Positions 1 to 64,000 are shown, numbered from the stretch's first letter. The stretch: 64,000 nt of DNA from Macrostomum lignano (GCA_002269645.1 NIVC01001700.1:201923-265922), one strand, 5' to 3'. Numbers and translations: made by a program. Notes: generated by a model from the letters alone, not told the origin.

Positions 1-402
1 CTTCATGGGCCGGAGTTTTGCGATTCCTGCTACAGGAAAACACTGATTTGAAAGCTTAAAATCTACAAGCTACGGAAGCTACAAATTTTAACAAAATACA
101 AGTAGCTCGTATAGCTGTTCTAATGTAGTTTAGAAAACTTAAGTATGACAAGGTGACGTGTGTGACAAATTGGATACATACTCCAGTTACTCCAGATTTT
201 TGGTCCAGAATCTCCTTGTCAAGTCCCAATTTTTTGGGGGGCTGCCTGAGTCACTTCAGCACTTCCCACGCCTCCACACACACAGCACACAACAGCACAG
301 CAGACGGTTGGGCACAGCAGCTTCAGAACTGACGCTGGCTGGCGGGGGAGGAGCTAAAAATAGAACACTGCCCCCCTGCCCCACCCCCCTTCCAACGCCG
401 GC

Positions 403-408
403 TATAAA
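403..408 (+). promoter_or_regulatory. TATA box of the prepropeptide gene
   Basis: GCTATAAATC in a GC-rich context, about 130 bp upstream of the ATG at 532. Confidence 0.55.
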
Positions 409-531
409 TCCGAGGCCCCGGCGGCGGCCTCCAAGCCCTCTTCACTTTTCTACGAACTCATTCGCAACTACCAGTCAGACGCAAAAGGCAAAAAGACAAC
501 CAACAAAGGAGCAAGAAAGCAGACAGCAGAC

Positions 532-825
532 ATGCAACGATTAAACGGCAGCCTTCTCATTGCTCTGGTATTCACCATGGCCCTGTGTATCGCCACACTG
601 GACGCTGTGGCCCTGTCTCCGTCCGGGGCTCTGCGACTGGAGCTGAACCGCAACTCGGCCGCCAGCGAGACCTACTTGATGCGGCAGCGGCCGGATTCCG
701 AGTCCCCAGCGGCAGCACTGCTCAGCAGGAAGCGACGCGGACCTGAGAACGTGCTCATGCGAGCCTACCAGTGCAACCTGTACCGGAAGCAGGGCAAGAA
801 GCCGCCGCCCAGCCTGAAGTGCTGA
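532..825 (+). CDS. Intronless secreted prepropeptide (putative neuropeptide/hormone precursor), 97 aa
   Basis: Hydrophobic signal peptide (LLIALVFTMALCIATLDA), a pro-region, a furin-type RKRR site, then a 28-aa C-terminal peptide GPENVLMRAYQCNLYRKQGKKPPPSLKC with two Cys. Codons are GC3-rich. TATAAA at 403-408; AATAAA at 1270 and 1337-1346. Confidence 0.75.
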   Translation: MQRLNGSLLIALVFTMALCIATLDAVALSPSGALRLELNRNSAASETYLMRQRPDSESPAAALLSRKRRGPENVLMRAYQCNLYRKQGKKPPPSLKC

Positions 826-1662
826 AGTGTCCTCCGCTCCGGCCGTTACACCAAATTTGACAGTTTTTTTTCTTGTGCTGCTCTCGCTAGTTAGCGTTGC
901 TATGATGCTGTGATGCTGTACTCTCTACATCATCAATGAATAGTTGAACTCAGCTAGGAAACTGGCTTTGTAATTGCGCTGGCCAACCAACTCAATTATT
1001 CCGCGAAGTTGTCTTTGAAATTTACATTATTTTAAATTTTTGCATGTTTATTTAGCTTGCTTCACGCGTAAACCAGTCACAACCCACATCTTTACACAGT
1101 TCATATGACCTCCAGCTGCTCATACCGCTTGTGCCCTCCTGACCTCAAGTGAGCTCGGCTCTCAGCTGTTTCTCATTGCTCACTAATTGCTCACAATTGA
1201 AAGTCTAAAAAAAGTGCCGCCGATTGTATTCAATCGCAAATTTTCTGAGCATTTCTTGCTTATAAATTGAATAAAATAACTGACTGGATCAGAGTTCGAT
1301 TAAACAAATCCTGCCTTGGATTTTATTTCTTCCGTCAATAAATAAACGAAAAGTTTGACGAGCCTGCACTTACAGCATCGGCAAAATGAGGGCACAAGTG
1401 GAAGCAATTGAGCTGTCAGGTGGTATCTCTATGTGCCAGCGCCTATAGGCCCTGGCCTAGTCATTCTGTGCCAGCGTGCGCACCGCAGACACAGAGAGGA
1501 GAACAGATAATAAGAAGACAGAGAGGAAGGAGTCACCGACTCTGCCGCTTGCTCACTGCAAGAGTTTAACTGTACTTAGAACTTTGTTACGGTAGGGGGG
1601 GGGGGTCGCCCAGCGCAAAAAAGTTGCCAATGCAGATTGATGGGAATTTTCACGCTCGCTGC

Positions 1663-1678
1663 AGAGAGAGAGGGAGAG

Positions 1679-1727
<49 letters not shown>
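1663..1727. repeat. (GA)n microsatellite
   Basis: Read directly from the sequence. Confidence 0.95.
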
Positions 1728-1733
<6 letters not shown>

Positions 1734-5920: not shown

Positions 5921-26374
<20,454 letters not shown>

Positions 26375-38830: not shown

Positions 38831-38890
38831 GTAAGTCTTATTTGTTCAATTCTACTCATTCAATAGCTATCAAAGCTTGCAAATTTCAAG
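38831..38890 (+). other. Probable 60-bp 5'UTR intron of KEAP1
   Basis: GTAAGT at 38831 and TTTCAAG ending at 38890, 16 nt before the ATG. Confidence 0.5.
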
Positions 38891-38906
38891 CGGCCCCCTA
38901 GCAACA

Positions 38907-41900
38907 ATGGATGGCGAGGACTATCCGCAGTGCAGTCTGGAGTCTGGCTCTGGCAGCTCTGGTGCTGCGGCCGCCGCTGCAGCCGCTGCTGCCGCTGCCG
39001 CCGCTGCCGCTGTCGCTGCCAGCAGTCACGGTGGCGGCGCGGCTCCAGCGGTGTTCCAGCAGCACAAGGAGCATCTAGCCGAGACATTTGCCGCTATGTA
39101 CGCTTTGTACGAGTCTGGCCAGCTCAGCGACGTTGCTCTGCTAGTTGAGGGCGAGCGCCTGCCCTGTCACAAGATTGTGCTCGCGTCCGCTTCGCCCTAC
39201 TTCCGAGCCATGTTCACTGGTGGACTACGCGAAGCTGCAATGTCTGAGGTGAGGAGCACTGGAGTTGTTGAAATGGTGCATCTTGGGAAACTTCAAGTTC
39301 AGAGGGACATTGTGGGTAGCAACACCCATGTATGAATAAAATCTATTGTATAGATTCCTTAATGGCATCTGAATAGTCTTGACTGAAATCACCTACCAAC
39401 TAACACTGTATGTGACCTTGAGGTTTCCCTAATGACAAAAAGTCCTAACGATCACAATCCATCAAGCTGTACATTCCCCGATCACAAACAATCAAGCTGT
39501 TCATTCCCCGATCACAATCCATCAAGCTGTACATTCCCCGATCACAATCCATCAAGCTGTTCATTCCCCGATCACAATCCATCAAGCTGTACATTCCCCG
39601 ATCACAATCCATCAAGCTGTACATTTCCCGATCACAAACCATCAAGCTGTACATTCCCCGATCACAATCCATCAAGCTGTACATTCCCCGATCACAAACC
39701 ACCAAACTGTACATTCCCAGATCACAAACCATTAAGCTGTACATTCCCCGATCACAAACCATCAAGCTGTACATTCCCCGATCACAAACCATCAAGCTGT
39801 ACATTCCCCGATCACAAACCATCAAGCTGTACATTCCCCAATCACATATAATCAAGCTGTACATTCCCCGAACACAAACCACCAAACTGTACATTCCCAG
39901 ATCACAAACCATTAAGCTGTACATTCCCCGATCACAAACCATCAAGCTGTATATTCCCCGAACACAAACCATCAAGCTGTACATTCCCCGATCACAAACC
40001 ATCAAGCTGTATATTCCCCGAACACAAACCATCAAGCTGTACATTCCCGAACACAAACCACCAAGCTGTACATTCCCCAATCACAAACCATTAAGCTGTA
40101 CATTCCCCGATCACAAACTATCAAGCTGTACATTCCCCGAACACAAACCACCAAACTGTACATTCCCAGATCACAAACCATTAAGCTGTACATTCCCCGA
40201 TCACAAACCATCAAGCTGTACATTCCCCGATCACAAACCATCAAGCTGTACATTCCCCGATCACAAACCACCAAGCTGTACATTCCCCGATCACAATCCA
40301 TCAAGCTGTACATTCCCAGATAGTCTGATATCAATTCAACACCTCAAATAAACAGGCAATGTGTACATCTAAGTCAATGCCGCACACTGAAACATTCCAG
40401 GTCCGATTGCACGGCGTCAAAGCTTCAGTTCTACGCCAGCTTCTTAGCTTCATCTACACTGGCGAAGTTCGCCTGACCCCATCAAACGTTTGCGACTTGC
40501 TGCCGGCCGCTACAATGCTGCAGTTGGCCTGCGTGACCAGGGCCTGCTGCCAGTACCTGCTGGCCCAGCTGCACCCCACCAACTGCCTGGGCATTCACCA
40601 GTTCGCCGTCACCCACGGCGCCTCCGAGTTGGCGCGCGATGCCGACAAATTTATTGAGAGACACTTCTGCGAGCTGGCCGGGCACGAGGAGTTCCTTGAG
40701 CTGTCCGATCGGTCGCTGGCACGAATTCTCGCCTGCGATCGGCTGCACGTGCGGACTGAGGCGGACGTGTTTAGCGCCCTGGTGCGCTGGGTGCATCATA
40801 ACAGGCCTGCCAGGTGCGCGGGTTTAGCTATGGCTTCCGGGAGGAGGGGGGGGGGTCAAACGCGTCTGGCTCTTGCACCACGACCCATCCCGATCCCGAT
40901 GAAAACGGTACATAGGCCAAGAAGCGCCCCAGAGTCGCTTGCGTCGCCCCAGAGTCGCTCGCGTCGCCCCAGAGTCTCTTGCGTCGCAGATGACACAGGT
41001 AAACTAGGAAACAAGGGACTCTAAACGATACTAAAACGACGAGATGTCACGGTAAAAGTCTTCAAAGAGTTGACTCTGAAACGATTCTGGAGCGGTAAAG
41101 TCGTATTATTTGAGGCGTGCTAGAATCGCTGTAAAGTTACACAAAGTTACACAATAAACAGTCAGTATAGCCTTTTGAACTCTAATTGCACTCTAACTAG
41201 CCTACTTAGTTAGTAGAAAATGAAGCGTTAACACAACGATTCTTGGACGACTCTTTCGCGATTCTACACAAGAGTCACTAGAGAGTTGTTTGCAACGACT
41301 TTTTAGGGATTCTTGTCCCGGTAACTTTTTGAACGGGCATGAGGGCCAACGCCCAAGGCACTGAGAGACAGTGTACATGCATTACCATTAGAAAGTCAGG
41401 ACCGCTGTACACCCTGTGTGAGCGTGTGTACAGTATTGGCGCTTTTATGTGTGCTCCGGAGTAGAATTGATATATAGCATGCAAGCCCAATGTCTAGTGG
41501 TTGTGTGTGGTTGGTTAGAGCGTCTGGCTCAACTTGAAGGTCGGGGGTTCGATTCCTGATCCTACTCGGAACAATTTGTGTCCTTGAGCAAGGCACTTAA
41601 CTCCTGCATTGCTTCAGTTCACCCAGCTGTAAAATGGGTGCCAGCATTAGCTGGGGTAATTGAGGCTGTGTGTGGCGATCCCTCAGTCCTTGGACTGAAC
41701 AGCCGTACGGAGCCTTCAGATGCACCGCGCAATAGCTGCGGCTGAGCTGTCGGTTGCACATCTGCCCATTAGGTCAGGTGTATTCAATTATTATTATTAT
41801 TACTCAATGTCTAAAGTGCTTATTAGCTTTATTATACATTCCTACTCTTCTATTCAAGGTCTCGCCATCTAGTTAGTCGCCATTTTCTCCCCCCCCCTGC

Positions 41901-44697
41901 AGATCCCCTCTCCTTCCGGACCTGCTCCCTCTCGTGCGCTGCCACGCGCTCTCCCCGGACTTCATCGATCGGCAGTTGCGCAACTGCGCCCTGCTGCGCG
42001 AGCAGCCCCGCGCTCGCGAGATCCTGGCCGCCGCTCACGCCAGCCTGCTGTCGCACCGGCGAGTTGACCCGAACCGGCGCCAGTCGCCGCTGAACTCGGT
42101 AATCTACGCCGCTGGCGGCTATTACCGGTACTCGCTGCGCACATTCGAATGCCTCAGCTTGGACACGATGCGCTGGGAGCGCCTGCCGGACCTCGCCAAT
42201 CCCCGCTCAGGCCTGGCCGCCGTGTCAGTTCGCGGCTGCGTCTACCTGATCGGCGGCCGGAACAATCACGAGAGCGGCAACTCGGACGCCGCCTGCCTGG
42301 AGGTGTTCGATCCGGCCGCTGGCCAGGGCCAATCCCGTTGGCACCGGTGCGCGCCCATGTCCGTGTCGCGCAATCGAGTGGCTGTTGGCGTTATTGACGA
42401 TAAAATCTACGCTGTTGGCGGCGCATCTCAGTCGCAGTCGCATTGCAGCGCCGAGAGGTTTGTGATGTCTGTCCGTCTTGTTAGGCTTGCTTATAGCTTA
42501 TCACAAATTGGCTCTGACAGCTTCCACATTTCTGTGAACAGATTCCAAATCCCCGTGAAGAGCTCCCAGATCCTGTAAAAAGGTCCCAGATCCCCGTAAA
42601 CAGCTCCCAGATCCCTGTAAATAGCTCCCAGGTCCCAGATCACCGTGAACAGTTCCTAGATCCCTGTGAACAGCTTTCAGACCCTGTGATCAGCTTCCAG
42701 ATCCCTGTGAACAGCTCCTAGATCCCTTTGAACAGCTTTCGAACCCTGTGAACAGCTTTCATATCCCTGTGAACAGCTCCCAGATCCCTGTAAACAGCTT
42801 ACAGATCCCTGTGAACAGCTTCCAGATCCATGTGAACAGCTCCTAGATCCATGTGAACAGCTTTCGGACCCATGAACAGCTCCAAAATCCCCGTTAACAG
42901 CTCCCAGATCCCCGTGAACAGCTTACAGATCCCTTTGAACAGCTTCCAGATCCATGTGAACAGCTCCCAGTTCCCTGTGAATAGCTTACAGATCCCTGTG
43001 AACAGCTCCCAGATCCCTGTGAACAGCTCCCAGATCCCTGTGAACAGCTTTCGGACCCATGAACAGCTCCCAAATCCCCGGTAACAGCTTTCAGACCCTG
43101 TGAACAGCTCTCAGATCCCTGTGAACAGCTTTCGGACCCATGAACAGCTCCCAAATCCCCGTAAATAGCTCCTAGATCACCGTGAACAGTTCCTAGATCC
43201 ATGTGAACAGCTTTCAGACCGTGTGATCAGCTCCCAGATCCCTGTGAACAACTCCCAGATCCAGCTTTCAGCTCCCAGATCCAGCTTTCAGATCCCATGT
43301 GAACAGCTCTCAGATCCCTGTGAACAGCTTTCGGACCCATGAAAAGCTCCCAAATCCCCGTTAACAGCTTTCAGACCCCGTGAACAGCTCTCAGATCTTA
43401 TGTGAACAGCTCTCAGATCCCTGTGAACAGCTTTCGGACCCATGAACAGCTCCCAAATCCCCGTTAACAGCTTTCAGACCCTGTGAACAGCTCTCAGATC
43501 TTATGTGAACAGCTCCCAGATCCCTGTGAACAGCTTTCGGACCCATGAACAGCTCCCAAATCTCCGTTAACAGCTTTCAGACCCTGTGAACAGCTCTCAG
43601 ATCCCTGTGAACAGCTTTCGGACCCATGAACAGCTCCCAAATCCCCGTTAACAGCTTTCAGACCCTGTGAACAGCTCCCAGATCCCTGTGAACAGCTTTC
43701 GGACCCATGAACAGCTCCCAAATCTCCGTTAACAGCTTTCAGACCCTGTGAACAGCTCTCAGATCCCTGTGAACAGCTTTCGGACCCATGAACAGCTCCC
43801 AAATCCCCGTTAACAGCTTTCAGACCCTGTGAACAGCTCTCAGATCCCTGTGAACAGCTTCCGGACCCATAAACAGCTCCCAAATCCCCGTTAACAGCTT
43901 TCAGACCCTGTGAACAGCTCTCAGATCCCTGTGAACAGCTTTCAGACCTTGTGCATAGCTCCCAGATTACCTCATGTATTGCTCAAAAATCCAAGATCCT
44001 CGGTCGCCGCCTCAATCCCAGATAATCAAGCGCCATTCCAATCCGGGATTCTTAGGCGCCACCTCAAAATGCCAGTTCCTTAGTTATTTCAGGTGTTACT
44101 GAGGCGAACACTGCCGTCATACTTGTATAAAAGTCTCAACTCTCAAGCAGTTAATGTCCATATTTATCCATTCCCAGGTACGACCCGGACTCCGACCAGT
44201 GGCTGCCGATCGCCCCAATGCGCCAGGCCCGCATAGGCCTCGGTGTCGCAGTTGTCGATCGTCTACTGTACGCAGTCGGCGGCTTCGACGGCTGCCAGCG
44301 GCTCAGCTCAGTTGAGCGCTACTGGCCTGAGGACGATCGTTGGGAGCCGGCCGCGGCCATGACGCAGCCACGCAGCGGCGCCGGAGTCGTAGCCGTCGGC
44401 AAGTACATCTACGCCATCGGCGGATACGATTCGCGCCAGCAATTGCGCACAGTTGAACGCCTGGACACAGAGGCCAACCAATGGCAGGCCTGCGCTCCGA
44501 TGCTGCGACCGCGCAGCGCTCTGGCCGCCGTTTCCGTTGACGACTGCGTTTGGGTGTTCGGCGGCTACGATGGATACGAGTTCGTGTCCTCTGTTGAGGT
44601 CTACTGTCCGCGCACCGACTCCTGGACAGAGCGGGAGCCCATGAGCTGCGGCAAGAGCGGCCACGGTGTCTGCCTAGGCGTGGCACCGCCAGTGTAG
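38907..44697 (+). CDS. KEAP1: Kelch-like ECH-associated protein 1 orthologue (BTB-BACK-6xKelch), 4 coding exons, about 609 aa
   Basis: Exons 38907-39248, 40401-40813, 41903-42457, 44178-44697, with compatible phases. KEAP1-diagnostic segments include VRCHALSPDFIDRQLRNC, PRSGLAAVSVRGCVYLIGGRNN, CAPMSVSRNRVAVGVIDDKIYAVGG and RIGLGVAVVDRLLYAVGGFDG. Confidence 0.93.
39445..40320. repeat. 30-bp minisatellite, about 29 copies (KEAP1 intron 1)
   Basis: Unit TACATTCCCCGATCACAAACCATCAAGCTG. Confidence 0.95.
41497..41804 (+). mobile_element. tRNA-derived SINE in KEAP1 intron 2
   Basis: A-box-like GTGGTTGGTTAGAGCG, B box GGTTCGATTCC (41546-41556), central GTGTCCTTGAGCAAGGCACTTAAC...CACCCAGCTGTAAAATGGGT, and a (TTA)n tail. 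A 9-bp TSD CAATGTCTA lies at 41488-41496 and 41805-41813. Confidence 0.85.
42533..43965. repeat. Roughly 21-bp complex minisatellite (KEAP1 intron 3)
   Basis: Unit CAGATCCCTGTGAACAGCTCC and variants. Confidence 0.9.
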
Positions 44698-51444: not shown

Positions 51445-53514
51445 TCAGCGATTCCATCCCGAGCCGAATCCCACAGCCGAGCCGATGTCGTCGTCAGAGA
51501 AAGCGCTGCCAGAGTCGCCGCCGACAACAAAGTCGGACTCGTAGGCCACCTCGCATGGCGCCGAGTGGCCGCCGAAATGGTGCGGCGCCGAAGCCGCCGA
51601 GCCCATCATGTAGCCCGTCATGCCGCCCATTGCGGCGCCTTTGGGGTGTTTTGAGATTAGCGTTGCTATTGCACTTTTGTTAATGAGCTAATGGATAGGG
51701 ATTATGGATTAGAGTGTAGAGGCTGAAGATAGCGATTAAGGACTAGAGATCAGTGGCAGAAGATAGCGATTAAGGACTAGAGATTAGTGGCTGAAGGTAG
51801 CGATTAAGGACTAGAGATTAGTGGCTGAAGGTAGCGATTAAGGACTAGAGATTAGTGGCTGAAGGTAGCGATTAAGGACTAGAGATTAGTGGCTGAAGGT
51901 AGCGATTAAGGACTAGAGATTAGTGGCTGAAGGTAGCGATTAAGGACTAGAGATTAGTGGCTGAAGGTAGCGATTAAGGACTAGAGATTAGTGGCTGAAG
52001 GTAGCGATTAAGGACTAGAGATTAGTGGCTGAAGGTAGCGATTAAGGACTAGAGATTAGTGGCTGAAGGTAGCGATTAAGGACTAGAGATTAGTGGCTGA
52101 AGGTAGCGATTAAGGACTAGAGATTAGTGGCTGAAGGTAGCGATTAAGGACTAGAGATTAGTGGCTGAAGGTAGCGATTAAGGACTAGAGATTAGTGGCT
52201 GAAAGTAGCGATTAAGGACTAGAGAATCGAGATTAGGGGTTGAAAATAGGGACTAAGGAATAGAGAATAGTGGCTGATAATAGACTCAAAGAATAGGTAC
52301 AGACAGGTGATTAAGGCCTAAGAGTTAATAATAGACAATAGAAATATGGACCTAGGGGATTACTTGGGTTGGAGGTATCGTGGGAGTTAGCAACAGTGAG
52401 ATAAGTGATATGAGATTATCTTGCTCTCTCTCTTCTATCCGCAGCTCAAGCCTCTTCCTATCTTTCGCTCACCAGACCAGAAGCCAGGCCCACTTCCGCC
52501 GCTGTGATGATACCCATAGTGTGAAGGCGGCGGTGGCGGTGGTGGCCCCTCCTCGGCGGTGTACACCCGGTGGTAGCGGTGCCGCCTGGAACGGAACAGC
52601 TTGAACACCAGCGCCAGCATGGCAACCACAACAGTGAAGGCTAGCAGGCCAGTCAAGACGCTAACCATTGGGTTGACAATGTGGACACGGCGGAACAGGT
52701 GGCCGTGAATGCCATGCTTGCGGTGCCGGCGCCTTCCAGACCATCGCAATGAATAGGTGAGCCCGCAGGAGCCGGCAAGGATGTATGGATCGTTAGGGTG
52801 ATCGTAGCCTTCACAGCTCACCTGAGATGAGTGGAGCAACTCAACAATTAGTGAGAGATTAATTTTGTGTCATAAAATCTTAGCATTAGATAAGCAATGT
52901 AAACATTTTTAATTTTAACTAAATGAATGAAGTTATATGGTTTAATGGATCAAGAATATATGATTCATGGAATTGATTATAGCTAATTTAGCAACAGATA
53001 CAGCTGTTATAATATAAGCAAAACAAATAATATGATATTGATAAATACAAACCAGAAAAGCTCAATAACATAACATGAGCCTTTTATTATGAAGATTTTA
53101 TGCCAAATTATAGAGTACTTGCACTTAAAGATAGTATGCAATTATGCTGACTACTAGTACTACTACATCAATCTTAATTAGATGCATGTATAAGAGAAAA
53201 ATGTTTACCTGAATAGTATCAAACTTAAGACGCTTCGACATCTGTGCTTCACATCGCCACTGAATGCTTAACCCATCCGATCCTTTATTGTAGCACTGAA
53301 CAACAGAGGGAAGAGATTGAGACTGACAAGTTGCTCTACCAGAAACACAACGGAGCTGTGGAACTGGGGCGAGTCGGCGACCTGTAGTAAATTTTCCTTC
53401 GCGAAGTGTGATTGTGTTTACTGAAGAGATTAATATTTTCTGCTGTAATTCCTGACAAAATCCACTTTGCAGATACGCAAAAACTGCTAAAAGCAGGACG
53501 ATTATCTTATTCAT
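51445..53514 (-). CDS. SARAF: Store-operated calcium entry-associated regulatory factor (SARAF/TMEM66), 3 exons, about 282 aa
   Basis: Exons 53209-53514, 52473-52821, 51445-51638. Contains a signal peptide, TTGRRLAPVPQLRCVSG...QCYNKGSDG...QWRC...VSCEGY...YILAGSCGLTYSL, a TM helix and the GFWSG-GAAMGGMTGYMMG motif. Confidence 0.93.
51720..52225. repeat. 34-bp minisatellite, about 15 copies (SARAF intron 2)
   Basis: Unit GGCTGAAGGTAGCGATTAAGGACTAGAGATTAGT. Confidence 0.95.
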
Positions 53515-55497
53515 CACAGGAAGCTGTCTGAGTTTAAATTGTGTTTGGAACTAAAATTAAAATCTAACTTAGGTAGATAGGGTCTAGGGATAGCTGAGTC
53601 TTATAATCAAACAAGTCTCCAGTTCACCGCTAAAAACAAGCTTTGGTGAAAAATATAAAGCTGGGCAAACGATACTGTATTTAATATGAGACGGAAAATC
53701 TAAACTATTTAGTTTTTTAGCTTTGGAGAATGTAATGTAGCAGTGTAGCTTGCTTGAATTATCTATTGCAGTCAAGACGACGAAAACTACCTAGGAAAAG
53801 TTGTAAAGTTTAAGTTAAAATCCAAGCACAACGCAAATAATGGAGCACTAAAGAACAAAATAAATACACTAAAATAAGATATCCACCAAATTCATACAAA
53901 AATTAAAAATTAAACTATTATCAAAAGTCTCTAATATGTGGTATTTTGTTATACCAATACATTTTTTGCGCAAAGTTAATTTTTATTTTATTTTATTGGA
54001 CTCAAGCGCGCTTGATTGCTTGCTTGCTGTTTAGGGCCCTACTGTCTGTCTGTCTGTCTTCTTTGTCTTCTTGTCGACAAGTCAAGCTTCAAGCCCTAAG
54101 TGAAAAGTGTGCTTTACTCATTATTCAGAGTTCTGACTGGTACAACTTTATAATAGCTTGTACTTGTATACTATAGGCCTACCTGAATATTTTCAAGGCA
54201 AACAAAATACAAAATGAATCTTAATGACTATTCAAAATATTAGCGGACAAATAGGTAGCAGACAAAATCAGTATTAGCCCTTGAAAGGGATTTTAAAACT
54301 TATTTGTTATCAATATTTTAATTCCATGTGATAAATATGATTGGCCTAAATAAGATGATACCTTAGGCCTATACATAAGTTACGTCTTATGACTCAAGTT
54401 AGGCCTAGGCCTATTTTTGAAAGTTATCAAATTTTTTAAACTTTACTTTAAAACTTAGTTGCCTGAATTCCCTGAAATTTAATTTATTTTTTCTTAAATG
54501 TAGCAAGCATAATTTTTTTCAAAAGTTCAAGTTTACTTAGCTTAGGCCTAGGGCCCTCAAAATATTGTTTTGAGAATTGAAAAAATAGTTTAGGCCAAAT
54601 ATAATAGATAGAGAACAAAGCAAACACTTGATTGCCTTTTTTAAGATTATATTTTGTCCTTTTTACAATGAGTAACAATATTTAATAACTAGGGCTAGGC
54701 TCTATTGAAAGTACTAATGCTAAACTTTTTTATATTAATAAAATTTAGAGTTTGCTAGTGTTTTATTGTACTTTTTAGGTATAATCTATAAGTTTCTAAG
54801 TTTATAATATGGTTTACCTAAGTATTTTTGTTTTACTTTAACTGTTTCTAATATTTTTTAAAATTAAAAACTACAGCTTTGGGAAAGATTTAAGATTTTG
54901 TTCCTGAATTAAATTGAAAGTTTCCATTCTGACTCTAATCAGAGAAGCTGACTTTTTGAGAAGTGCAAAGAAGGGCATATGTTATGTTCTGACATTTCCT
55001 TGTCTTCTATGGTTACTTGTGGCTAGCTAGAGGTATATTTTGTCATTGTTGTTATATGGGCTTTTTCTCTTGTTAGTCTTTTAGATTCTTCCTATCAATC
55101 CTACTGTTGATATTTTGAAATTAGCCCCAATTCAATTATCTAGAACTAGCTGAAACACTACGCTACAATATTGGCTCAATTTGCTAATAAATTTGCAAAC
55201 AAAGCATATGAAAACCATTTTCCTGACTCTTCATAACTTGATTCATAACTTGCATGAAACTAGTATGGGCCTCTGTCCAATGATTAGGAATCATACATGG
55301 GCAATTGCTGGCCGCCCTGGCCAATCTGGCCACCAAAAATTGTCATGGACCTGGGGTAAGTTGCAAAAATGCCCACCCCAAACAATAGATGTATTACTAG
55401 TCAGATGACGAGGCATTCAGCCTTAACAAAATAGTCATAGTTACTCCTGCCGTTTACCCAAAATTGCGTTAATTTTGCCTTACGGTTTCTTTCACAG

Positions 55498-55742: not shown

Positions 55743-56168
55743 ATGGCGGCCAAGCGATTGCAGGCTGTGAAACCGCTGCGCCGGCAGGTTTGCATTAAGA
55801 AGCGCAACAAGCACATCCAGCGTCATCACAGCGACCGTTACTACCGCGTCAAACCCAGCTGGCGCCGCCCGAAGGGCATCGACAACCGGATGCGCAGGAA
55901 ATTCAAAGGCCAGTCGGTGATGCCGCAGATTGGATTCGGATCTGACAAGCGGACTAAGCATGTCCACAGGGACGGCTTCCGTCACGTGCTGGTGCACAAC
56001 GCCAAGGAGCTGGAGATGCTGATGATGGAGAACCGGCGTTACGCTGGGGTCATTGCGCACACCGTGAGCTCTAAGAAGCGCAAAGGCATGGTGGAGCGGG
56101 CTGCCCAGCTCGGCATCCGGCTGGTGAATGGCAGCTCGAAGCTGCGCACTGACGAGCAGCAGGAGTGA
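55743..56168 (+). CDS. RPL32: 60S ribosomal protein L32 (eL32), divergent copy, 141 aa, no intron within the CDS
   Basis: RHHSDRY...WRRPKGIDNRMRRKFKG..MPQIGFGS...LVHNAKELEML...AHTVSSKKRK..VERAAQL. Confidence 0.95.
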   Translation: MAAKRLQAVKPLRRQVCIKKRNKHIQRHHSDRYYRVKPSWRRPKGIDNRMRRKFKGQSVMPQIGFGSDKRTKHVHRDGFRHVLVHNAKELEMLMMENRRYAGVIAHTVSSKKRKGMVERAAQLGIRLVNGSSKLRTDEQQE

Positions 56169-60500: not shown

Positions 60501-63500
60501 GTAGGTGCTGCCCGGTGCTGAGGTCTGGGAAGAGTTCGATTAGGATTTGGGGATTCGAATTTTTTTATAAGAAGTATCTTGACAATGGTAGGAATCATAG
60601 AAATGTTAGATGCCTTTTAAGGGTGGATTATTTTTTTAGCATATTAGATGTTTAGATTGGTAGAAAAATGGTAATTTAGTAAAATGATGGGTTGGTAAAA
60701 CTGTAGCTTAGTAGATTGTCGGCGGATTGGTAGAATGGTAGATGATTACAATGGCAAACTGGTATATCAGAGATTGTTATATATTGGCATATTGGTACAA
60801 GGGTAGATTGGAAGATTATTAGAATCGCATTGGTAGAGTCGTAGATTGGTAGAGTGGTAGATACGTGTAGGTGGAATGGTAGATTGGTAGAATCGTAGTT
60901 AGGCAGAATGGTAGATTGTTAGAATGATAGATTGTTAGATGTGTAGAATAGTGCATTGATTGATGGCTAGATTGGTATATTTGTAGAATCGTAGTTAGTA
61001 GAATGGTAGATTGCTAGATTGGCAGAATGGTAGATTAAGTGGATTGTTAGATTTGCAGATTGGTAGAATCTTAGATAGGCAGAATTGTAGATTAGTAGAA
61101 TGGTAGATTGATAAACTAGTAAGATTGAGAGACTGGTAGATACATGCGGTATAACTGTCGATGTTAGAATGGTAGATTAGTAGAATGGTAGATTGATAAA
61201 CTAGAAGATTGATATACTGGTAGATACATGCGGTATATTTGTTGATTTTAGAATGGTAGATTGGCTAGATTGGTAGACTATTGCAATCTAGTGCCCGCTT
61301 CGGGGCGCCCAATAAGCAAGGAGCAAAAATTATTCATGCAAATCAATTAAAACAACACATTTTCTTAAGAACTAATACCTTCTACAGTTTTATAAATCAC
61401 CTTATTCCAGTAAAATTGTCATGGACAAAGATTCTTGCTTCTAAAAGTAACAAAAGTACGCAACAAAATAAAGCCCTCACAAAGATAACAGGCATTCCCC
61501 CTAAATCGAAAGTATCCCCCAGACCGCAAGCATCCCCCCATCCCCCGAGATAGCAAGCATCCCCCAGACAGCAAGCATCCCCCCATCCCCCCAGATAGCA
61601 AGCATCCCCCAGATAGCAAGCATCCCCCAGACAGCAAGCATCCCTCATATAACAAGCATCCCTCATATAACAAGCCCCTCAGATAGCAAGCATACCCAGA
61701 TAGCAAGCATCCCCAGATAGCAAGCATCCCTCAGATAGCAAGCATCCCTCAGATAACAAGCCCCTCAGATAGCAAGCATCCCCAGATAACAAGCATCCCT
61801 CAGATAGCAAGCATTCCTCAGATAACAAGCCCCTCAGATAGCAAGCATCCCCAGATAACAAGCATCCCTCAGATAGCAAGCATTCCTCAGATAACAAGCC
61901 CCTCAGATAGCAAGCATCCCTCAGATAACAAGCCCCTCAGATAGCAAGCATCCCCAGATAACAAGCACCCCTCAGATAGCAAGCATTCCTCAGATAACAA
62001 GCCCCTCAGGTAGCAAGCATCCCCCAGACAGCAAGCATTCGGCAACAGCAAGCAAGTAGATTAGTAGAATGGCAGGCGGTAGAGGCGGTTTTCTAGAACT
62101 GCAGATTGGTAAGTAAGTTGGACAGAACTGTAAATTATTGCTGCTGAGCAAGCATGGCACTTTGCTGCCGCCAACCTGGAAAAGCGTCTGCACGTTGGTG
62201 CCGGACTTCACCACTGGCCGGATGACTGTCTGGCCGGCCAGCTCCTCCAGATTCTTCACCGTCGCAGCCGGGATGTTCAGCGTGAGGTAGCCGATCATGT
62301 CCGCGGTGTAGTAGGCCATCATCACCACCGTGACGATCCACCAGAAGCCCAGGACGAAACGGGAGGAGGAGGCGACCGGGTAGAAGTCCTGGCCTGTGTG
62401 GGTGAGGATGGGGTGGGTGAGTAAGGATTGGGGTGGGTGAGTAAGGATTGGGGTGGGTGAGTAAGGATTGGGGTGGGTGAGTAAGGATTGGGGTGGGTGA
62501 GTGAGGATTGGGGTGGGTGAGTAAGGATTGGGGTGGGTGAGTAAGGAGTGGGGTGGGTGAGTAAGGATTGGGGTGGGTGAGTGAGGATTGGGGTGGGTGA
62601 GTAAGGATTGGGGTGGGTGAGTAAGGATTGGGGTGGGTGAGTGAGGATTTGAGTGGGTGGATGAGTGAGGAGTGGGGTGGGTGAGTGAGTAGTGGGGTAT
62701 GTGAGTGAGGATTTGGGTATGAGTGAAAATTGGGGTGGATGAGTGAGGATATGTGAGAAAGTGAGTGAGAATTCGTGTTGGTGAGTGAACGGATTGGTGG
62801 ATTGGAGCTGCAGCCATAGCTCGCATGGATTAATAAGCAGATTCGCACCTTGCTGCAGCAGCGAGCCAACGATAGACCAAAAATTCTCCCTTATCGACAC
62901 CTCGTCGGAGATCTTCTCCGACAGATTCATGTTCCAGGCGGAGAATGGCGACAGGTAGGAGAACAGGAACATACACACGGCGGCGGTGAACACAGAGCCA
63001 AGGATGGCCAGCCAGCTGTTCAGGGAGAACGGCGACAGCACTCGGAACATAGGGTTCTCCTGGCCTGGGGTCGGTTTCAGGGACGTTTTGGATTGAAGTT
63101 CAGAGGTCCAACAAATCACGAGAGCTCAAGGTACCAAAAAAGAGATTTCAGGGGTCCCAGTAAAAAGGTGTCAGAATTCCTAAAAATCAGGGGTCAGAGG
63201 TCTAAATAAGAGGTGTCAGGGCCTTCAAAAGAGGTGTCAGGGACCGCAGTAAGCGAGGTGTCAGGGACCGCCGCAATAAGCGAGGTGTCAGGAACCGCAA
63301 TAAGCGGGGTGTCAGGGACCGCAGTAAGCGAGGTGTCAGGAACCGCAATAAGCGAAGTGTCAGGGACCTCAATGAGAGAGGTGTCAGGGACCGCAATGAG
63401 AGAGGTGTCAGGGACCGCAATGAGAGAGGTGTCAGGGACCGCAATGAGAGAGGTGTCAGGGACCGCAATGAGAGAGGTGTCAGGGACCGCAATGAGAGAG

Positions 63501-64000
63501 GTGTCAGGGACCGCAATGAGAGAGGTGTCAGGGACCGCAATGAGAGAGGTGTCAGGGACCGCAATGAGAGAGGTGTCAGGGACCTCAATAAGAGAGGTGT
63601 CAGGGACCGCAATGAGAGAGGTGTCATGGACCACAATGAGAGAGGTGTCATGGACCACAATGAGAGAGGTGTCATGGACCACAATGAGAGAGGTGTCAGG
63701 GTCTCCAATAAATTAATCTCCATGAAAGCCTCAAAAACTCGATAAGCTGTTTTCCTTGGATCACCTGGCTTTTTAATCAAAATCGTATTGCCATCCTCCA
63801 TGAAGGCCTCGGAGAAGTCAATCACGGTCTGCCGGATCGCCGTCATCGTGAACGGCCCGATGGCGAAGTCGATTTTCTACAGAAAGAATTTCGGTGGCAA
63901 TTCCACAATTACTGCTAGCCAATATTAGCTAATAAAGGCTTGTGTTCAGAGGCTACAGACCCTGTCCAGAATTTCCTTGACCATGCCGTTCCATGTGCCG
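57532..64000 (-). CDS. Ionotropic glutamate receptor-family / IR-type channel, 3' portion (5' end outside the window)
   Basis: Exons 63961-64000 (partial, GTWNGMVKEILDR), 63765-63876 (IDFAIGPFTMTAIRQTVIDFS), 62849-63064 (M1, pore SLLQQG), 62176-62393 (M3, start of S2), 60268-60524 (S2), 57532-57817 (M4, stop). All phases are compatible. Confidence 0.9.
57990..60260. repeat. 22-bp minisatellite, about 100 copies (last iGluR intron)
   Basis: Unit GATCATAAAGATTGGGATCTGG and variants. Confidence 0.95.
60640..62040. repeat. Degenerate GGTAGATT repeat (about 60640-61278) and 17-18-bp CAGATAGCAAGCATCCC repeat (about 61516-62040)
   Basis: Read directly from the sequence. Confidence 0.8.
62398..62770. 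repeat. 20-bp G-rich minisatellite abutting an iGluR acceptor
   Basis: Unit GGGTGGGTGAGTAAGGATTG. Confidence 0.9.
63200..63705. repeat. 24-bp minisatellite, about 21 copies
   Basis: Unit GAGGTGTCAGGGACCGCAATGAGA. Confidence 0.95.

What the first reader, a model, noticed from the sequence alone, without database searches (positions are those of the whole stretch)
532..825. Unrecognised secreted peptide precursor with a 17-residue disulfide ring ending at the C-terminal Cys
Seen: an intronless gene with a TATA box, polyA signals, a signal peptide, an RKRR site and a mature 28-mer GPENVLMRAYQ-CNLYRKQGKKPPPSLKC*. The two Cys enclose exactly 15 residues and the second Cys is the last residue. Known: C-type natriuretic peptide has this geometry (furin-processed, 17-aa ring, no tail), but here the CFGxxxDRI motif is absent and only the Cys pair and Leu15 match. 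The internal G-KK could be an amidation site, although the following Pro normally blocks cleavage. Inference: this is an undescribed neuropeptide, hormone or gland peptide family. I do not recognise it as any known invertebrate neuropeptide, and the ring-size match may be convergent or chance.
Basis: partly seen in the sequence, partly recalled or inferred. Interest (0 to 1): 0.75.

Follow-up and report, generated by a model that had tools for sequence, protein, structure and literature searches.

The report
Orphan flatworm secreted cyclic-peptide precursor gene
This is a real, transcribed, single-exon gene of the flatworm Macrostomum lignano. It encodes a small secreted precursor that is probably cut at an RKRR site to release a 28-residue, strongly basic peptide. 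The peptide probably closes into a 17-residue disulfide loop. It has no detectable relatives, is not a natriuretic peptide, and its function is untested.

Summary
Window 532-825 (+) is a 97-codon ORF with a TATA box (403-408), no upstream ATG, poly(A) signals at 1270-1346, a signal-peptide-like N-terminus, one RKRR site, and a C-terminal 28-mer with Cys12 and Cys28.

The window is Macrostomum lignano contig NIVC01001700.1. GenBank already lists the ORF as a "hypothetical protein" (Mlig013743 cluster). That annotation was built from RNA-seq, and its 5'-partial CDS starts about 40 nt after the TATA box, so a transcript exists.

- **Coding signal:** GC3 is 0.78, like known exons in the window, against 0.40-0.49 in the flanks.
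- **Selection:** two other genomic copies differ at 4 nucleotides in the CDS, all synonymous. Two of these are in the P4 Arg codon of RKRR.
- **Relatives:** none were found in Pfam, a 5.8-billion-cluster word search, an exhaustive phmmer run over 1.84 billion representatives, PDB by sequence or fold, or a metagenome scan.
- **Natriuretic peptide link:** the resemblance is ring size only. None of the 7 fixed motif positions match, and ring identity is at chance.
- **Antimicrobial reading:** the predicted helix is hydrophilic and not amphipathic, which argues against a membrane-lytic peptide.

Best reading: an orphan, convertase-processed signalling or gland peptide. Its tissue, receptor and conservation in other species could not be tested here. 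Interest is moderate to low.

The parts
154..253 (+). Upstream promoter region with candidate regulatory motifs: TGACG half-CRE at 154, CCAAT at 226, perfect AP-1/TRE TGAGTCA at 247-253. A further TGACG lies at 330.
   Evidence: Motif scan. The motifs are unchanged in the two other genomic copies. Function is untested, and a single 7-mer is only mildly unexpected in 530 bp.
403..408 (+). TATA box (TATAAA).
   Evidence: It is conserved in L001 and L002. It lies about 37-42 nt upstream of the annotated transcript 5' end.
443..531 (+). 5' UTR, from the inferred transcript start (about 443-445) to the start codon. It contains no upstream ATG.
   Evidence: The GenBank 5'-partial CDS starts at 445, although the frame stays open back to the stop at 361-363. 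The CDS is therefore limited by the RNA-seq transcript end. This is the most diverged segment between copies, with indels.
532..825 (+). Complete CDS of the 97-aa prepropeptide, single exon, stop codon included.
   Evidence: GC3 0.78. The four differences from the sister copies are all synonymous.
532..606 (+). Signal peptide (residues 1-25; an alternative cleavage is after residue 21).
   Evidence: Hydropathy and the -3/-1 rule. AF2 predicts a helix at 4-28. The exact cleavage site is inferred.
607..726 (+). Cys-free pro-region (residues 26-65), net charge about 0, predicted disordered.
   Evidence: pI 6.2; pLDDT below 50 for most of residues 36-69.
727..738 (+). Tetrabasic convertase site R66-K67-R68-R69 (furin/PC consensus R-x-K/R-R).
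   Evidence: Read directly from the sequence. The P4 Arg codon is AGG here and CGA in the sister copies, so two substitutions kept Arg. Cleavage itself is inferred.
739..822 (+). Predicted mature 28-mer GPENVLMRAYQCNLYRKQGKKPPPSLKC. Cys12 (772-774) and Cys28 (820-822) bracket a 17-residue ring.
   Evidence: predicted helix at E72-K86 with pLDDT 72-90; pI 9.8; charge +4.7; oxidised monoisotopic mass 3215.65 Da. The disulfide is inferred.
826..1365 (+). 3' UTR with poly(A) signals AATAAA at 1270, ATTAAA at 1299, and AATAAA at 1337 and 1341.
   Evidence: The region is about 98% identical to the sister copies. Which poly(A) site is used is not known here.

Best explanation
Window 532-825 is a transcribed, intronless gene of Macrostomum lignano. 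It is one of three near-identical copies in this neopolyploid genome.

The inferred pathway has four steps:
1. The 97-aa product enters the ER through an N-terminal signal peptide, which is removed after about A21 or A25.
2. The only two remaining cysteines, C81 and C97, oxidise to a disulfide.
3. A furin/PC-type convertase cuts after R66-K-R-R69.
4. This releases a 28-residue peptide of 3.2 kDa that is strongly basic (pI 9.8) and hydrophilic. Its N-terminal half is a short helix. A Gly-Lys-Lys-Pro-Pro-Pro turn brings the C-terminal Cys back onto the helix and closes a 17-residue ring.

Pro at P1' should protect the internal G-K-K-P from convertase cleavage, so the 28-mer most likely stays intact and unamidated.

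The most likely role is an extracellular signalling ligand: a neuropeptide or peptide hormone acting on a receptor that has not been identified. The precursor is built like those of somatostatin, allatostatin-C, urotensin II, MCH and CNP, but it is not related to any of them by sequence.

**Shown:** the ORF, the promoter and poly(A) elements, the RNA-seq-derived gene model, the coding signature, the synonymous-only divergence, and the absence of relatives.

**Inferred:** signal-peptide cleavage, the disulfide, cleavage at RKRR, and the signalling role.
For: - **Gene anatomy:**
- **Organism and existing annotation:**. The Mlig_3_7 annotation is built only from RNA-seq (StringTie/TACO/TBONE plus TransDecoder; PMC5730564). 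Its 5'-partial CDS starts at 445, although the frame is open back to 361. This places a transcript 5' end about 40 nt downstream of the TATA box.
- **Coding signature:** GC3 is 0.78, equal to RpL32 and Kelch exons, against flanks at 0.40-0.49.
- **Purifying selection:** 4 of 4 substitutions against the sister copies are synonymous (S=76.7, N=214.3 sites; P about 0.005-0.02). They include a double substitution, AGG to CGA, that keeps the P4 Arg of RKRR. The 5' UTR carries indels.
- **Prohormone-like layout:** a hydrophobic N-terminus, a Cys-free disordered spacer, a single tetrabasic site, and both Cys in the C-terminal product, one of them as the last residue.
- **Structure prediction:** AF2, from the single sequence, gives a confident helix at 72-86 (pLDDT 72-90).
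- **Peptide chemistry:** the peptide is hydrophilic (GRAVY -1.0). Its helix is not amphipathic (muH 0.17, against a shuffle mean of 0.28). This fits a receptor ligand better than a membrane-lytic peptide.
Against: - No expression site, peptide mass or receptor is known.
- No orthologue could be examined, so conservation of RKRR and the Cys pair beyond the roughly 3-5% diverged in-genome copies is untested.
- The selection test rests on only four substitutions.
- Known flatworm neuropeptides are mostly short, amidated and multi-copy (Collins 2010 Table S4). A single unamidated cyclic 28-mer is atypical for them.
- Macrostomum has many lineage-restricted secreted gland and seminal-fluid proteins (abstracts of PMC5977470 and PMC7336406). 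On prior odds, an orphan secreted protein is as likely to be exocrine as neuronal.
- Signal-peptide and cleavage predictions were made by rule, not with SignalP or NeuroPred.
Confidence: 0.5

Rival explanations
1. It is an exocrine gland product rather than a neuropeptide. Candidates are a seminal-fluid (prostate) peptide transferred at mating, a cement, adhesive or rhabdite gland peptide, or a non-lytic host-defence peptide. It would be made by the same secretory and convertase route but released to the outside or into the partner.
For: - No relative exists anywhere outside M. lignano. This pattern is typical of fast-evolving reproductive and gland proteins in this genus (abstracts of PMC5977470 and PMC7336406).
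- A strong TATA promoter, a compact intronless gene and high GC3 fit a highly expressed, cell-type-specific secretory product.
- The peptide is cationic (+4.7) and its C-terminal disulfide loop ends at the last residue. From my own knowledge, this geometry is also seen in Drosophila sex peptide and in 'Rana-box' antimicrobial peptides.
Against: - The helix is not amphipathic and the peptide is very hydrophilic, which argues against a membrane-lytic antimicrobial peptide.
- The pro-region is neutral, not anionic.
- The gene ID and sequence were not found in the held supplements of the M. lignano seminal-fluid in situ screen or of three other M. lignano papers. This is weak evidence, because the files are partial and use different ID schemes.
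Confidence: 0.33
2. It is a true, highly diverged or convergent natriuretic-peptide-type ligand of a flatworm receptor guanylyl cyclase.
For: - The 17-residue ring has no C-terminal tail, and the peptide sits at the C-terminus of a furin-site precursor, as in CNP.
- Receptor guanylyl cyclase orthologues occur across animals, and their protostome ligands are largely unknown (PMC6878697).
Against: - None of the 7 fixed non-Cys motif positions are satisfied.
- Ring identity to CNP is 1 of 15 inner positions, against a shuffle mean of 1.13.
- Pfam gave no hit at E<=10.
- A Pro-Pro-Pro stretch sits inside the ring.
- Natriuretic peptides are known only from vertebrates, and earlier protostome candidates were judged not orthologous (PMC6878697).
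- Ring size alone has a chance of about 1 in 27, and many ring sizes would each have matched some known family.
Confidence: 0.03
3. The protein is secreted but is not cleaved at RKRR, or is cleaved elsewhere as well. For example, cleavage at R85-K86 or K89-K90 would give a two-chain, disulfide-linked product. In either case the active entity would not be the intact 28-mer.
For: - Cleavage is only predicted from the consensus.
- The ring contains RK and KK dibasic pairs.
- G-K-K could in principle be an amidation signal.
Against: - R-K-R-R followed by Gly is an optimal furin/PC site. The P4 Arg is kept despite two substitutions.
- KK is followed by Pro, which is unfavourable at P1' (established convertase specificity, from my own knowledge).
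- RK lies inside a confidently predicted helix.
Confidence: 0.1
4. It is not a functional protein-coding gene. It would be a chance ORF on a transcribed, repeat-rich region, or a recent de novo ORF without a function.
For: - There are no homologues anywhere.
- The window is full of spurious long ORFs created by minisatellites.
- The copies are too similar for a strong selection test.
Against: - The ORF is not repetitive.
- GC3 is 0.78, against flanks of 0.40-0.49.
- All 4 substitutions are synonymous, while the adjacent 5' UTR has indels.
- The TATA box, uATG-free leader, signal peptide, tetrabasic site and Cys pair together form a coherent design.
Confidence: 0.04

Closest known systems
C-type natriuretic peptide (CNP-22) and the natriuretic peptide family
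   Same: The precursor has a signal peptide, a pro-region and a furin-type site, with the active peptide at the extreme C-terminus. Two Cys enclose 15 residues, giving a 17-residue ring, and the second Cys is the last residue.
   Different: None of the conserved ring residues (CFGxxxDRIxxxSxxGC) are present, and identity is at chance. Pfam gave no hit. The ring contains PPP and is highly basic. The family is known only from vertebrates (PMC6878697). It is not a member.
Somatostatin / allatostatin-C / urotensin II / MCH-type precursors
   Same: The precursor logic is the same. A single bioactive disulfide-cyclised, unamidated peptide sits at the C-terminal end of a small precursor, directly after a basic convertase site. 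Somatostatin-14 also ends in the ring-closing Cys (from my own knowledge).
   Different: The ring sizes differ (12, 8, 6 and 10 residues, against 17). The core motifs (FWKT, [YF]FNPxSC, CFWKYC, the MCH ring) are absent. Pfam gave no hit and HMMER found no relative.
Drosophila sex peptide / DUP99B
   Same: These are small, basic secreted peptides with a Pro-rich segment and a C-terminal disulfide loop. In sex peptide the last residue is the loop-closing Cys (from my own knowledge). They are taxonomically restricted. They are relevant because M. lignano has an active seminal-fluid biology.
   Different: Sex peptide has no pro-region or furin site, since the signal peptide is followed directly by the mature peptide. 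Its loop is 13 residues and it has a Trp-rich N-terminus. There is no sequence similarity (Pfam).
Cationic host-defence peptides with a C-terminal disulfide loop (Rana-box brevinins and esculentins, thanatin, arenicin)
   Same: They are cationic, 20-40 residues long, have a single disulfide that forms a C-terminal loop, and are released from a propeptide.
   Different: Those peptides are amphipathic and hydrophobic. This peptide has GRAVY -1.0 and a helix hydrophobic moment below the shuffle mean. There is no sequence similarity.
Described flatworm neuropeptide precursors (npp, spp, npy and other families of Schmidtea and the parasitic flatworms)
   Same: They are small secretory precursors processed at basic sites, and many are lineage-restricted.
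   Different: The listed planarian families are mostly amidated, often multi-copy linear peptides (RL/RMamide, RFamide, Wamide, NPY/F and others; Collins 2010 Table S4). None was recovered as a relative. The catalogue of Koziol et al. 2016 could not be read.

Membership tests
Natriuretic peptides (ANP/BNP/CNP; Pfam ANP) | Two Cys enclosing 15 residues (17-residue ring) | tested here: met
   C81 and C97 of the precursor are Cys12 and Cys28 of the 28-mer. The disulfide itself was not testable.
Natriuretic peptides (ANP/BNP/CNP; Pfam ANP) | Conserved ring motif C-F-G-x3-[DEA]-[RH]-I-x3-S-x2-G-C | tested here: not met
   None of the 7 fixed non-Cys positions are satisfied. One of 15 inner positions matches CNP, against a shuffle mean of 1.13.
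Natriuretic peptides (ANP/BNP/CNP; Pfam ANP) | Activates a receptor guanylyl cyclase (cGMP) | not testable with these tools
   This needs a cell-based cGMP assay.
Natriuretic peptides (ANP/BNP/CNP; Pfam ANP) | Taxonomic range: vertebrates | tested here: not met
   The source is the flatworm Macrostomum lignano. [quoted passage not shown]
Somatostatin / allatostatin-C | C-terminal cyclic peptide after a basic site | tested here: met
   RKRR is followed by a 28-mer that ends the precursor.
Somatostatin / allatostatin-C | Ring of 12 (somatostatin) or 8 (allatostatin-C) residues with an FWKT or [YF]FNPxSC core; detectable profile similarity | tested here: not met
   The ring is 17 residues (CNLYRKQGKKPPPSLKC) and contains neither core. 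Pfam gave no hit. phmmer found no relative.
Urotensin II / MCH | CFWKYC hexapeptide ring (urotensin II) or the 10-residue MCH ring | tested here: not met
   Read directly from the sequence. Pfam gave no hit.
Drosophila sex peptide family (Pfam Sex_peptide) | Profile similarity; 13-residue C-terminal loop; no propeptide | tested here: not met
   Pfam gave no hit. The ring is 17 residues. A 40-44 residue pro-region and an RKRR site are present.
Membrane-active cationic antimicrobial peptides | Amphipathic structure with a hydrophobic face | tested here: not met
   The helix 72-86 has muH 0.166, against a shuffle mean of 0.282 (77.5% of shuffles are at least as high). GRAVY is -1.01.
Membrane-active cationic antimicrobial peptides | Net positive charge; released from a propeptide | tested here: met
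   The charge is +4.7 and the pI is 9.8. An RKRR site is present.
Generic convertase-processed prohormone or propeptide (a 'kind', not a homology family) | N-terminal signal peptide | tested here: met
   Hydropathy, the -3/-1 rule and the AF2 helix at 4-28. This is rule-based; SignalP was not run.
Generic convertase-processed prohormone or propeptide (a 'kind', not a homology family) | Basic cleavage site flanking the product, with actual cleavage | tested here: inconclusive
   The R-K-R-R consensus is present and the P4 Arg is kept through two substitutions. Cleavage needs peptidomics.
Generic convertase-processed prohormone or propeptide (a 'kind', not a homology family) | Expression in neurons or endocrine cells | not testable with these tools
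   No expression data were reachable. The gene ID was absent from the held supplements of 5 papers; a sixth paper held none.
Described flatworm neuropeptide families (npp, spp, npy ...) | Sequence or motif similarity to a described flatworm precursor | tested here: not met
   Only the gene itself was recovered from collections that include NCBI flatworm proteins. The planarian family list has no comparable cyclic peptide. The Koziol 2016 catalogue is not held.

The most novel reading that the evidence does not exclude
The 17-residue-ring, tail-less 28-mer is a ligand of a flatworm receptor guanylyl cyclase. It would have arisen independently of vertebrate natriuretic peptides, or diverged from them beyond recognition. 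That would make it one of the first endogenous peptide ligands identified for the orphan protostome NPR-like receptors.
Probability: 0.03. Interest if true: 0.8.

Novelty: new member of a known kind. Interest (0 to 1): 0.3.

Why it matters
The neuropeptide complement of flatworms is still poorly sampled (PMC13551398), and the papers searched describe no neuropeptide catalogue for Macrostomum. M. lignano is the one flatworm with stable transgenesis, working RNAi and transparency. A compact gene with its promoter within about 450 bp is therefore an easy reporter and knock-down target.

If the peptide is neuronal, it adds a new cyclic, unamidated peptide type to the flatworm repertoire and a ligand for receptor deorphanisation. 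If it comes from the prostate or another gland, it becomes a candidate for seminal-fluid or surface biology in a model of sexual conflict.

In either case it remains one orphan secreted peptide. It does not bear on a long-standing question unless the guanylyl-cyclase reading turns out to be true.

Tried and rejected
- **Pfam:** hmmscan of the precursor at E<=10 gave 0 families.
- **Word-indexed search of 5.8 billion protein clusters:** only the gene's own cluster came back.
- **Exhaustive phmmer over 1.84 billion representatives:** it returned the gene itself plus P0003 (E 2e-4). P0003 is a 650-aa tandem-repeat ORF and was rejected as spurious.
- **PDB by sequence:** the 28-mer matched only a designed TPR repeat at E 0.2, which is meaningless.
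- **PDB by fold:** Foldseek with the AF2 model found nothing.
- **Metagenome contig scan:** 304 pattern matches, none confirmed.
- **Rfam on the whole window:** no hit.
- **Literature:** no paper contains the peptide strings or 'Mlig013743'. The gene ID and sequence were searched for in the held supplements of 5 M. lignano papers and were absent; a sixth paper held no supplements.
- **Koziol et al. 2016 flatworm neuropeptide catalogue:** not held.
- **Paralogues:** tblastn found none in the window or within +/-5 kb of the three loci.
- **Amphipathic antimicrobial helix:** rejected on hydrophobic moment.
- **CNP homology:** rejected on motif and chance-level identity.
- **Longer protein from upstream exons:** rejected. 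The frame is closed at 361-363, upstream of the TATA box. The annotated CDS is 5'-limited only by the transcript end, and the leader has no ATG.

Full report
**What is there.** Window 532-825 (+) is an ATG-to-TGA ORF of 97 codons. It encodes MQRLNGSLLIALVFTMALCIATLDAVALSPSGALRLELNRNSAASETYLMRQRPDSESPAAALLSRKRRGPENVLMRAYQCNLYRKQGKKPPPSLKC. A TATAAA box lies at 403-408. There is no ATG between 400 and 531, and the start codon has A at -3. The nearest in-frame upstream stop is at 361-363. Poly(A) signals lie at 1270, 1299, 1337 and 1341.

[quoted passage not shown] It is annotated there as a 5'-partial 126-aa protein. The same genome holds two further copies on NIVC01000995.1 and NIVC01004387.1, listed as 'hypothetical protein BOX15_Mlig013743g3, partial' (PAA47625.1, PAA73750.1). 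Those two copies are 99.6% identical to each other. They are about 95-97% identical to the window copy over kilobases of flank, with downstream synteny kept. This is what the neopolyploid genome of this species would produce (abstract of PMC10733133). No paralogue lies in the window or within +/-5 kb of any copy.

**Transcript evidence.** The Mlig_3_7 annotation was built only from RNA-seq, using StringTie/TACO, a de novo transcriptome and the TBONE boundary pipeline, with ORFs called by TransDecoder (PMC5730564). The annotated CDS starts at window 445, although the reading frame is open back to 361-363. The 5'-partial call is therefore set by the 5' end of the assembled transcript. That end lies about 37-42 nt downstream of the TATA box, where a TATA-driven start site is expected. 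The sister-copy model starts within 3 nt of the equivalent position. I could not see read coverage or the tissue of expression.

**Coding and selection signals.**
- Third-position GC is 0.78. The window overall is 0.446, the flanks are 0.49 and 0.40, and the RpL32, BTB and Kelch exons in the same window are 0.74-0.84.
- Against the sister copies the CDS has four nucleotide differences in three codons: C19 TGT/TGC, P30 CCG/CCA and R66 AGG/CGA. All are synonymous. With 76.7 synonymous and 214.3 non-synonymous sites, the chance of this under neutrality is about 0.005 per nucleotide or 0.018 per codon event.
- The R66 codon is the P4 arginine of the RKRR site. It changed twice and still encodes Arg.
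- The 5' UTR, by contrast, carries several indels and substitutions.
- The sample is small but consistent with constraint on the protein.
- Most long 'ORFs' in this window are minisatellite artefacts. Among the 42 non-repetitive ATG-ORFs of at least 60 aa, three others have a comparably hydrophobic N-terminus. Two are SARAF exons, and only one of those also has a furin-type motif; the third has GC3 of only 0.38.

**Anatomy of the product.**
- Residues 1-25 form a classical signal sequence: MQR, then a 17-20 residue hydrophobic core. Cleavage is plausible after A21 or A25.
- Residues 26-65 are Cys-free, carry net charge of about 0, and are predicted disordered.
- R66-K-R-R69 is the only R-x-[KR]-R site.
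- The remaining 28 residues have pI 9.8, charge +4.7 and GRAVY -1.0.
- AlphaFold2, run on the single sequence, gives a confident helix for E72-K86 (block pLDDT 72-90). The following G-K-K-P-P-P-S-L-K-C segment has block pLDDT of 79-90.
- After signal-peptide removal only C81 and C97 remain, so an intramolecular disulfide is the natural reading, but it is an inference. Random placement of two Cys in the proprotein would give 'one last, the other also after the cleavage site' about 1% of the time (post hoc).
- The internal G-K-K is followed by Pro, which convertases disfavour at P1' (established specificity, from my own knowledge). I therefore expect no amidation there.
- The predicted product is the intact oxidised 28-mer, with a monoisotopic mass of 3215.65 Da.

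**Search for relatives.** Nothing related was found. Pfam gave no family at E<=10. The 5.8-billion-cluster word search returned only the gene's own cluster. The exhaustive phmmer run over 1.84 billion representatives returned the gene itself and one spurious tandem-repeat ORF. PDB showed nothing by sequence or by fold, and a metagenome scan found nothing. No paper holds the sequence strings or the gene ID. These collections include the NCBI proteomes of planarians, flukes and tapeworms, so there is no detectable flatworm homologue. For a 97-residue precursor, homology could still be missed. The other Macrostomum genomes and transcriptomes are not in any collection I could search. The key test, conservation of RKRR and the Cys pair in orthologues, therefore remains open.

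**Comparison with natriuretic peptides.** Ring length (17 residues), the lack of a tail and the furin-site precursor layout match CNP, but nothing else does. One of 15 inner ring positions is identical to CNP, against a shuffle mean of 1.13. None of the seven fixed non-Cys motif positions are satisfied. Three consecutive prolines sit in the ring. Natriuretic peptides are known only from vertebrates, and earlier protostome candidates were judged non-orthologous, although receptor guanylyl cyclases are widespread and mostly orphan in protostomes (PMC6878697). The match in ring size has a chance of about 1 in 27, and many other ring sizes would have matched some other family. The peptide is not a natriuretic peptide. 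A convergent guanylyl-cyclase ligand cannot be excluded, but nothing supports it specifically.

**Other comparisons.** The precursor logic is that of the somatostatin, allatostatin-C, urotensin II and MCH precursors: one unamidated cyclic peptide at the C-terminal end after a basic site. Ring sizes and core motifs differ, and no profile matches. Drosophila sex peptide also ends in a loop-closing Cys, but it has no propeptide. C-terminal-loop antimicrobial peptides are cationic too, but they are amphipathic. Here the helix has a hydrophobic moment of 0.17, below the shuffle mean of 0.28, and the peptide is strongly hydrophilic. That argues against membrane lysis. The listed planarian peptide families are mostly amidated linear peptides (Collins 2010 Table S4).

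**Most likely mechanism and its probability.**

| Claim | My estimate |
|---|---|
| Real, expressed gene for a secreted protein | about 0.85-0.9 |
| Cleaved at RKRR to give the disulfide-looped 28-mer | about 0.6-0.7 |
| The 28-mer is a signalling ligand (neuropeptide or hormone) | about 0.45 |
| Exocrine role (seminal fluid, gland or non-lytic defence) | about 0.33 |

The exocrine rival is strong for two reasons. Macrostomum has many lineage-restricted secreted reproductive and gland proteins (abstracts of PMC5977470 and PMC7336406). An orphan with a strong TATA promoter fits that class as well. An in situ hybridisation or a look at existing positional RNA-seq data would decide between the two.

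**Verdict.** This is an uncharacterised, taxonomically orphan member of a well-known kind of gene: a convertase-processed secretory peptide precursor. It is already deposited as a hypothetical protein, and the CNP-like ring is best explained as coincidence. Interest is moderate to low (0.3). It is a tractable candidate in a transgenic flatworm model rather than a surprise.

Noticed in passing
window 154-335: The promoter of the peptide gene carries a perfect AP-1/TRE site (TGAGTCA, 247-253), two TGACG half-CRE sites (154, 330) and a CCAAT box (226). All are unchanged in the two other genomic copies. Activity- or stress-responsive regulation is possible but untested.
   Followed up: partly
window 727-729 (codon 66): The P4 arginine codon of the RKRR site is AGG in the window copy and CGA in the two sister copies. 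Two substitutions have preserved Arg.
   Followed up: yes
window 1663-1733 and 1990-2248: Just 3' of the gene lie an (AG)36 microsatellite and a 41-bp tandem repeat of 6.3 copies at 100% identity.
   Followed up: no
window 5300-31500 and scattered to 63800: The density of minisatellites is extremely high (periods of 12, 14, 16, 21, 27 and 41 bp among others). They generate most of the long six-frame 'ORFs' in the window. The only non-self phmmer hit (P0003, 650 aa) is the same kind of repeat artefact.
   Followed up: partly
window ~6600-20350 (-): This is a Delta/Serrate-type Notch-ligand gene. A DSL domain exon lies at about 19.0-19.3 kb, and an EGF plus transmembrane exon at about 7.1-7.8 kb. 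The open frames run straight on into minisatellite arrays.
   Followed up: partly
window 38877-44697 (+): This is a BTB-BACK-Kelch (KLHL-type) gene in at least four exons, with minisatellites in the introns.
   Followed up: partly
window 52435-53517 (-): This is a SARAF (store-operated Ca2+ entry regulatory factor) gene with two exons. Its first exon encodes its own signal peptide.
   Followed up: partly
window 55743-56168 (+): This is a ribosomal protein L32 gene, apparently a single coding exon, with GC3 of 0.82. It served here as a codon-usage yardstick.
   Followed up: partly
window 62322-63846 (-): These are ionotropic glutamate-receptor-like exons. The Lig_chan Pfam hit is just below the gathering score. 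They run to the window edge and are interrupted by repeats.
   Followed up: no
L003 1-4556 (upstream of window start): The 4.5 kb upstream of the window holds only GA-rich sequence and arrays with 42-bp and 59-bp periods. No convincing gene is there, so the peptide gene sits isolated between repeat blocks.
   Followed up: partly
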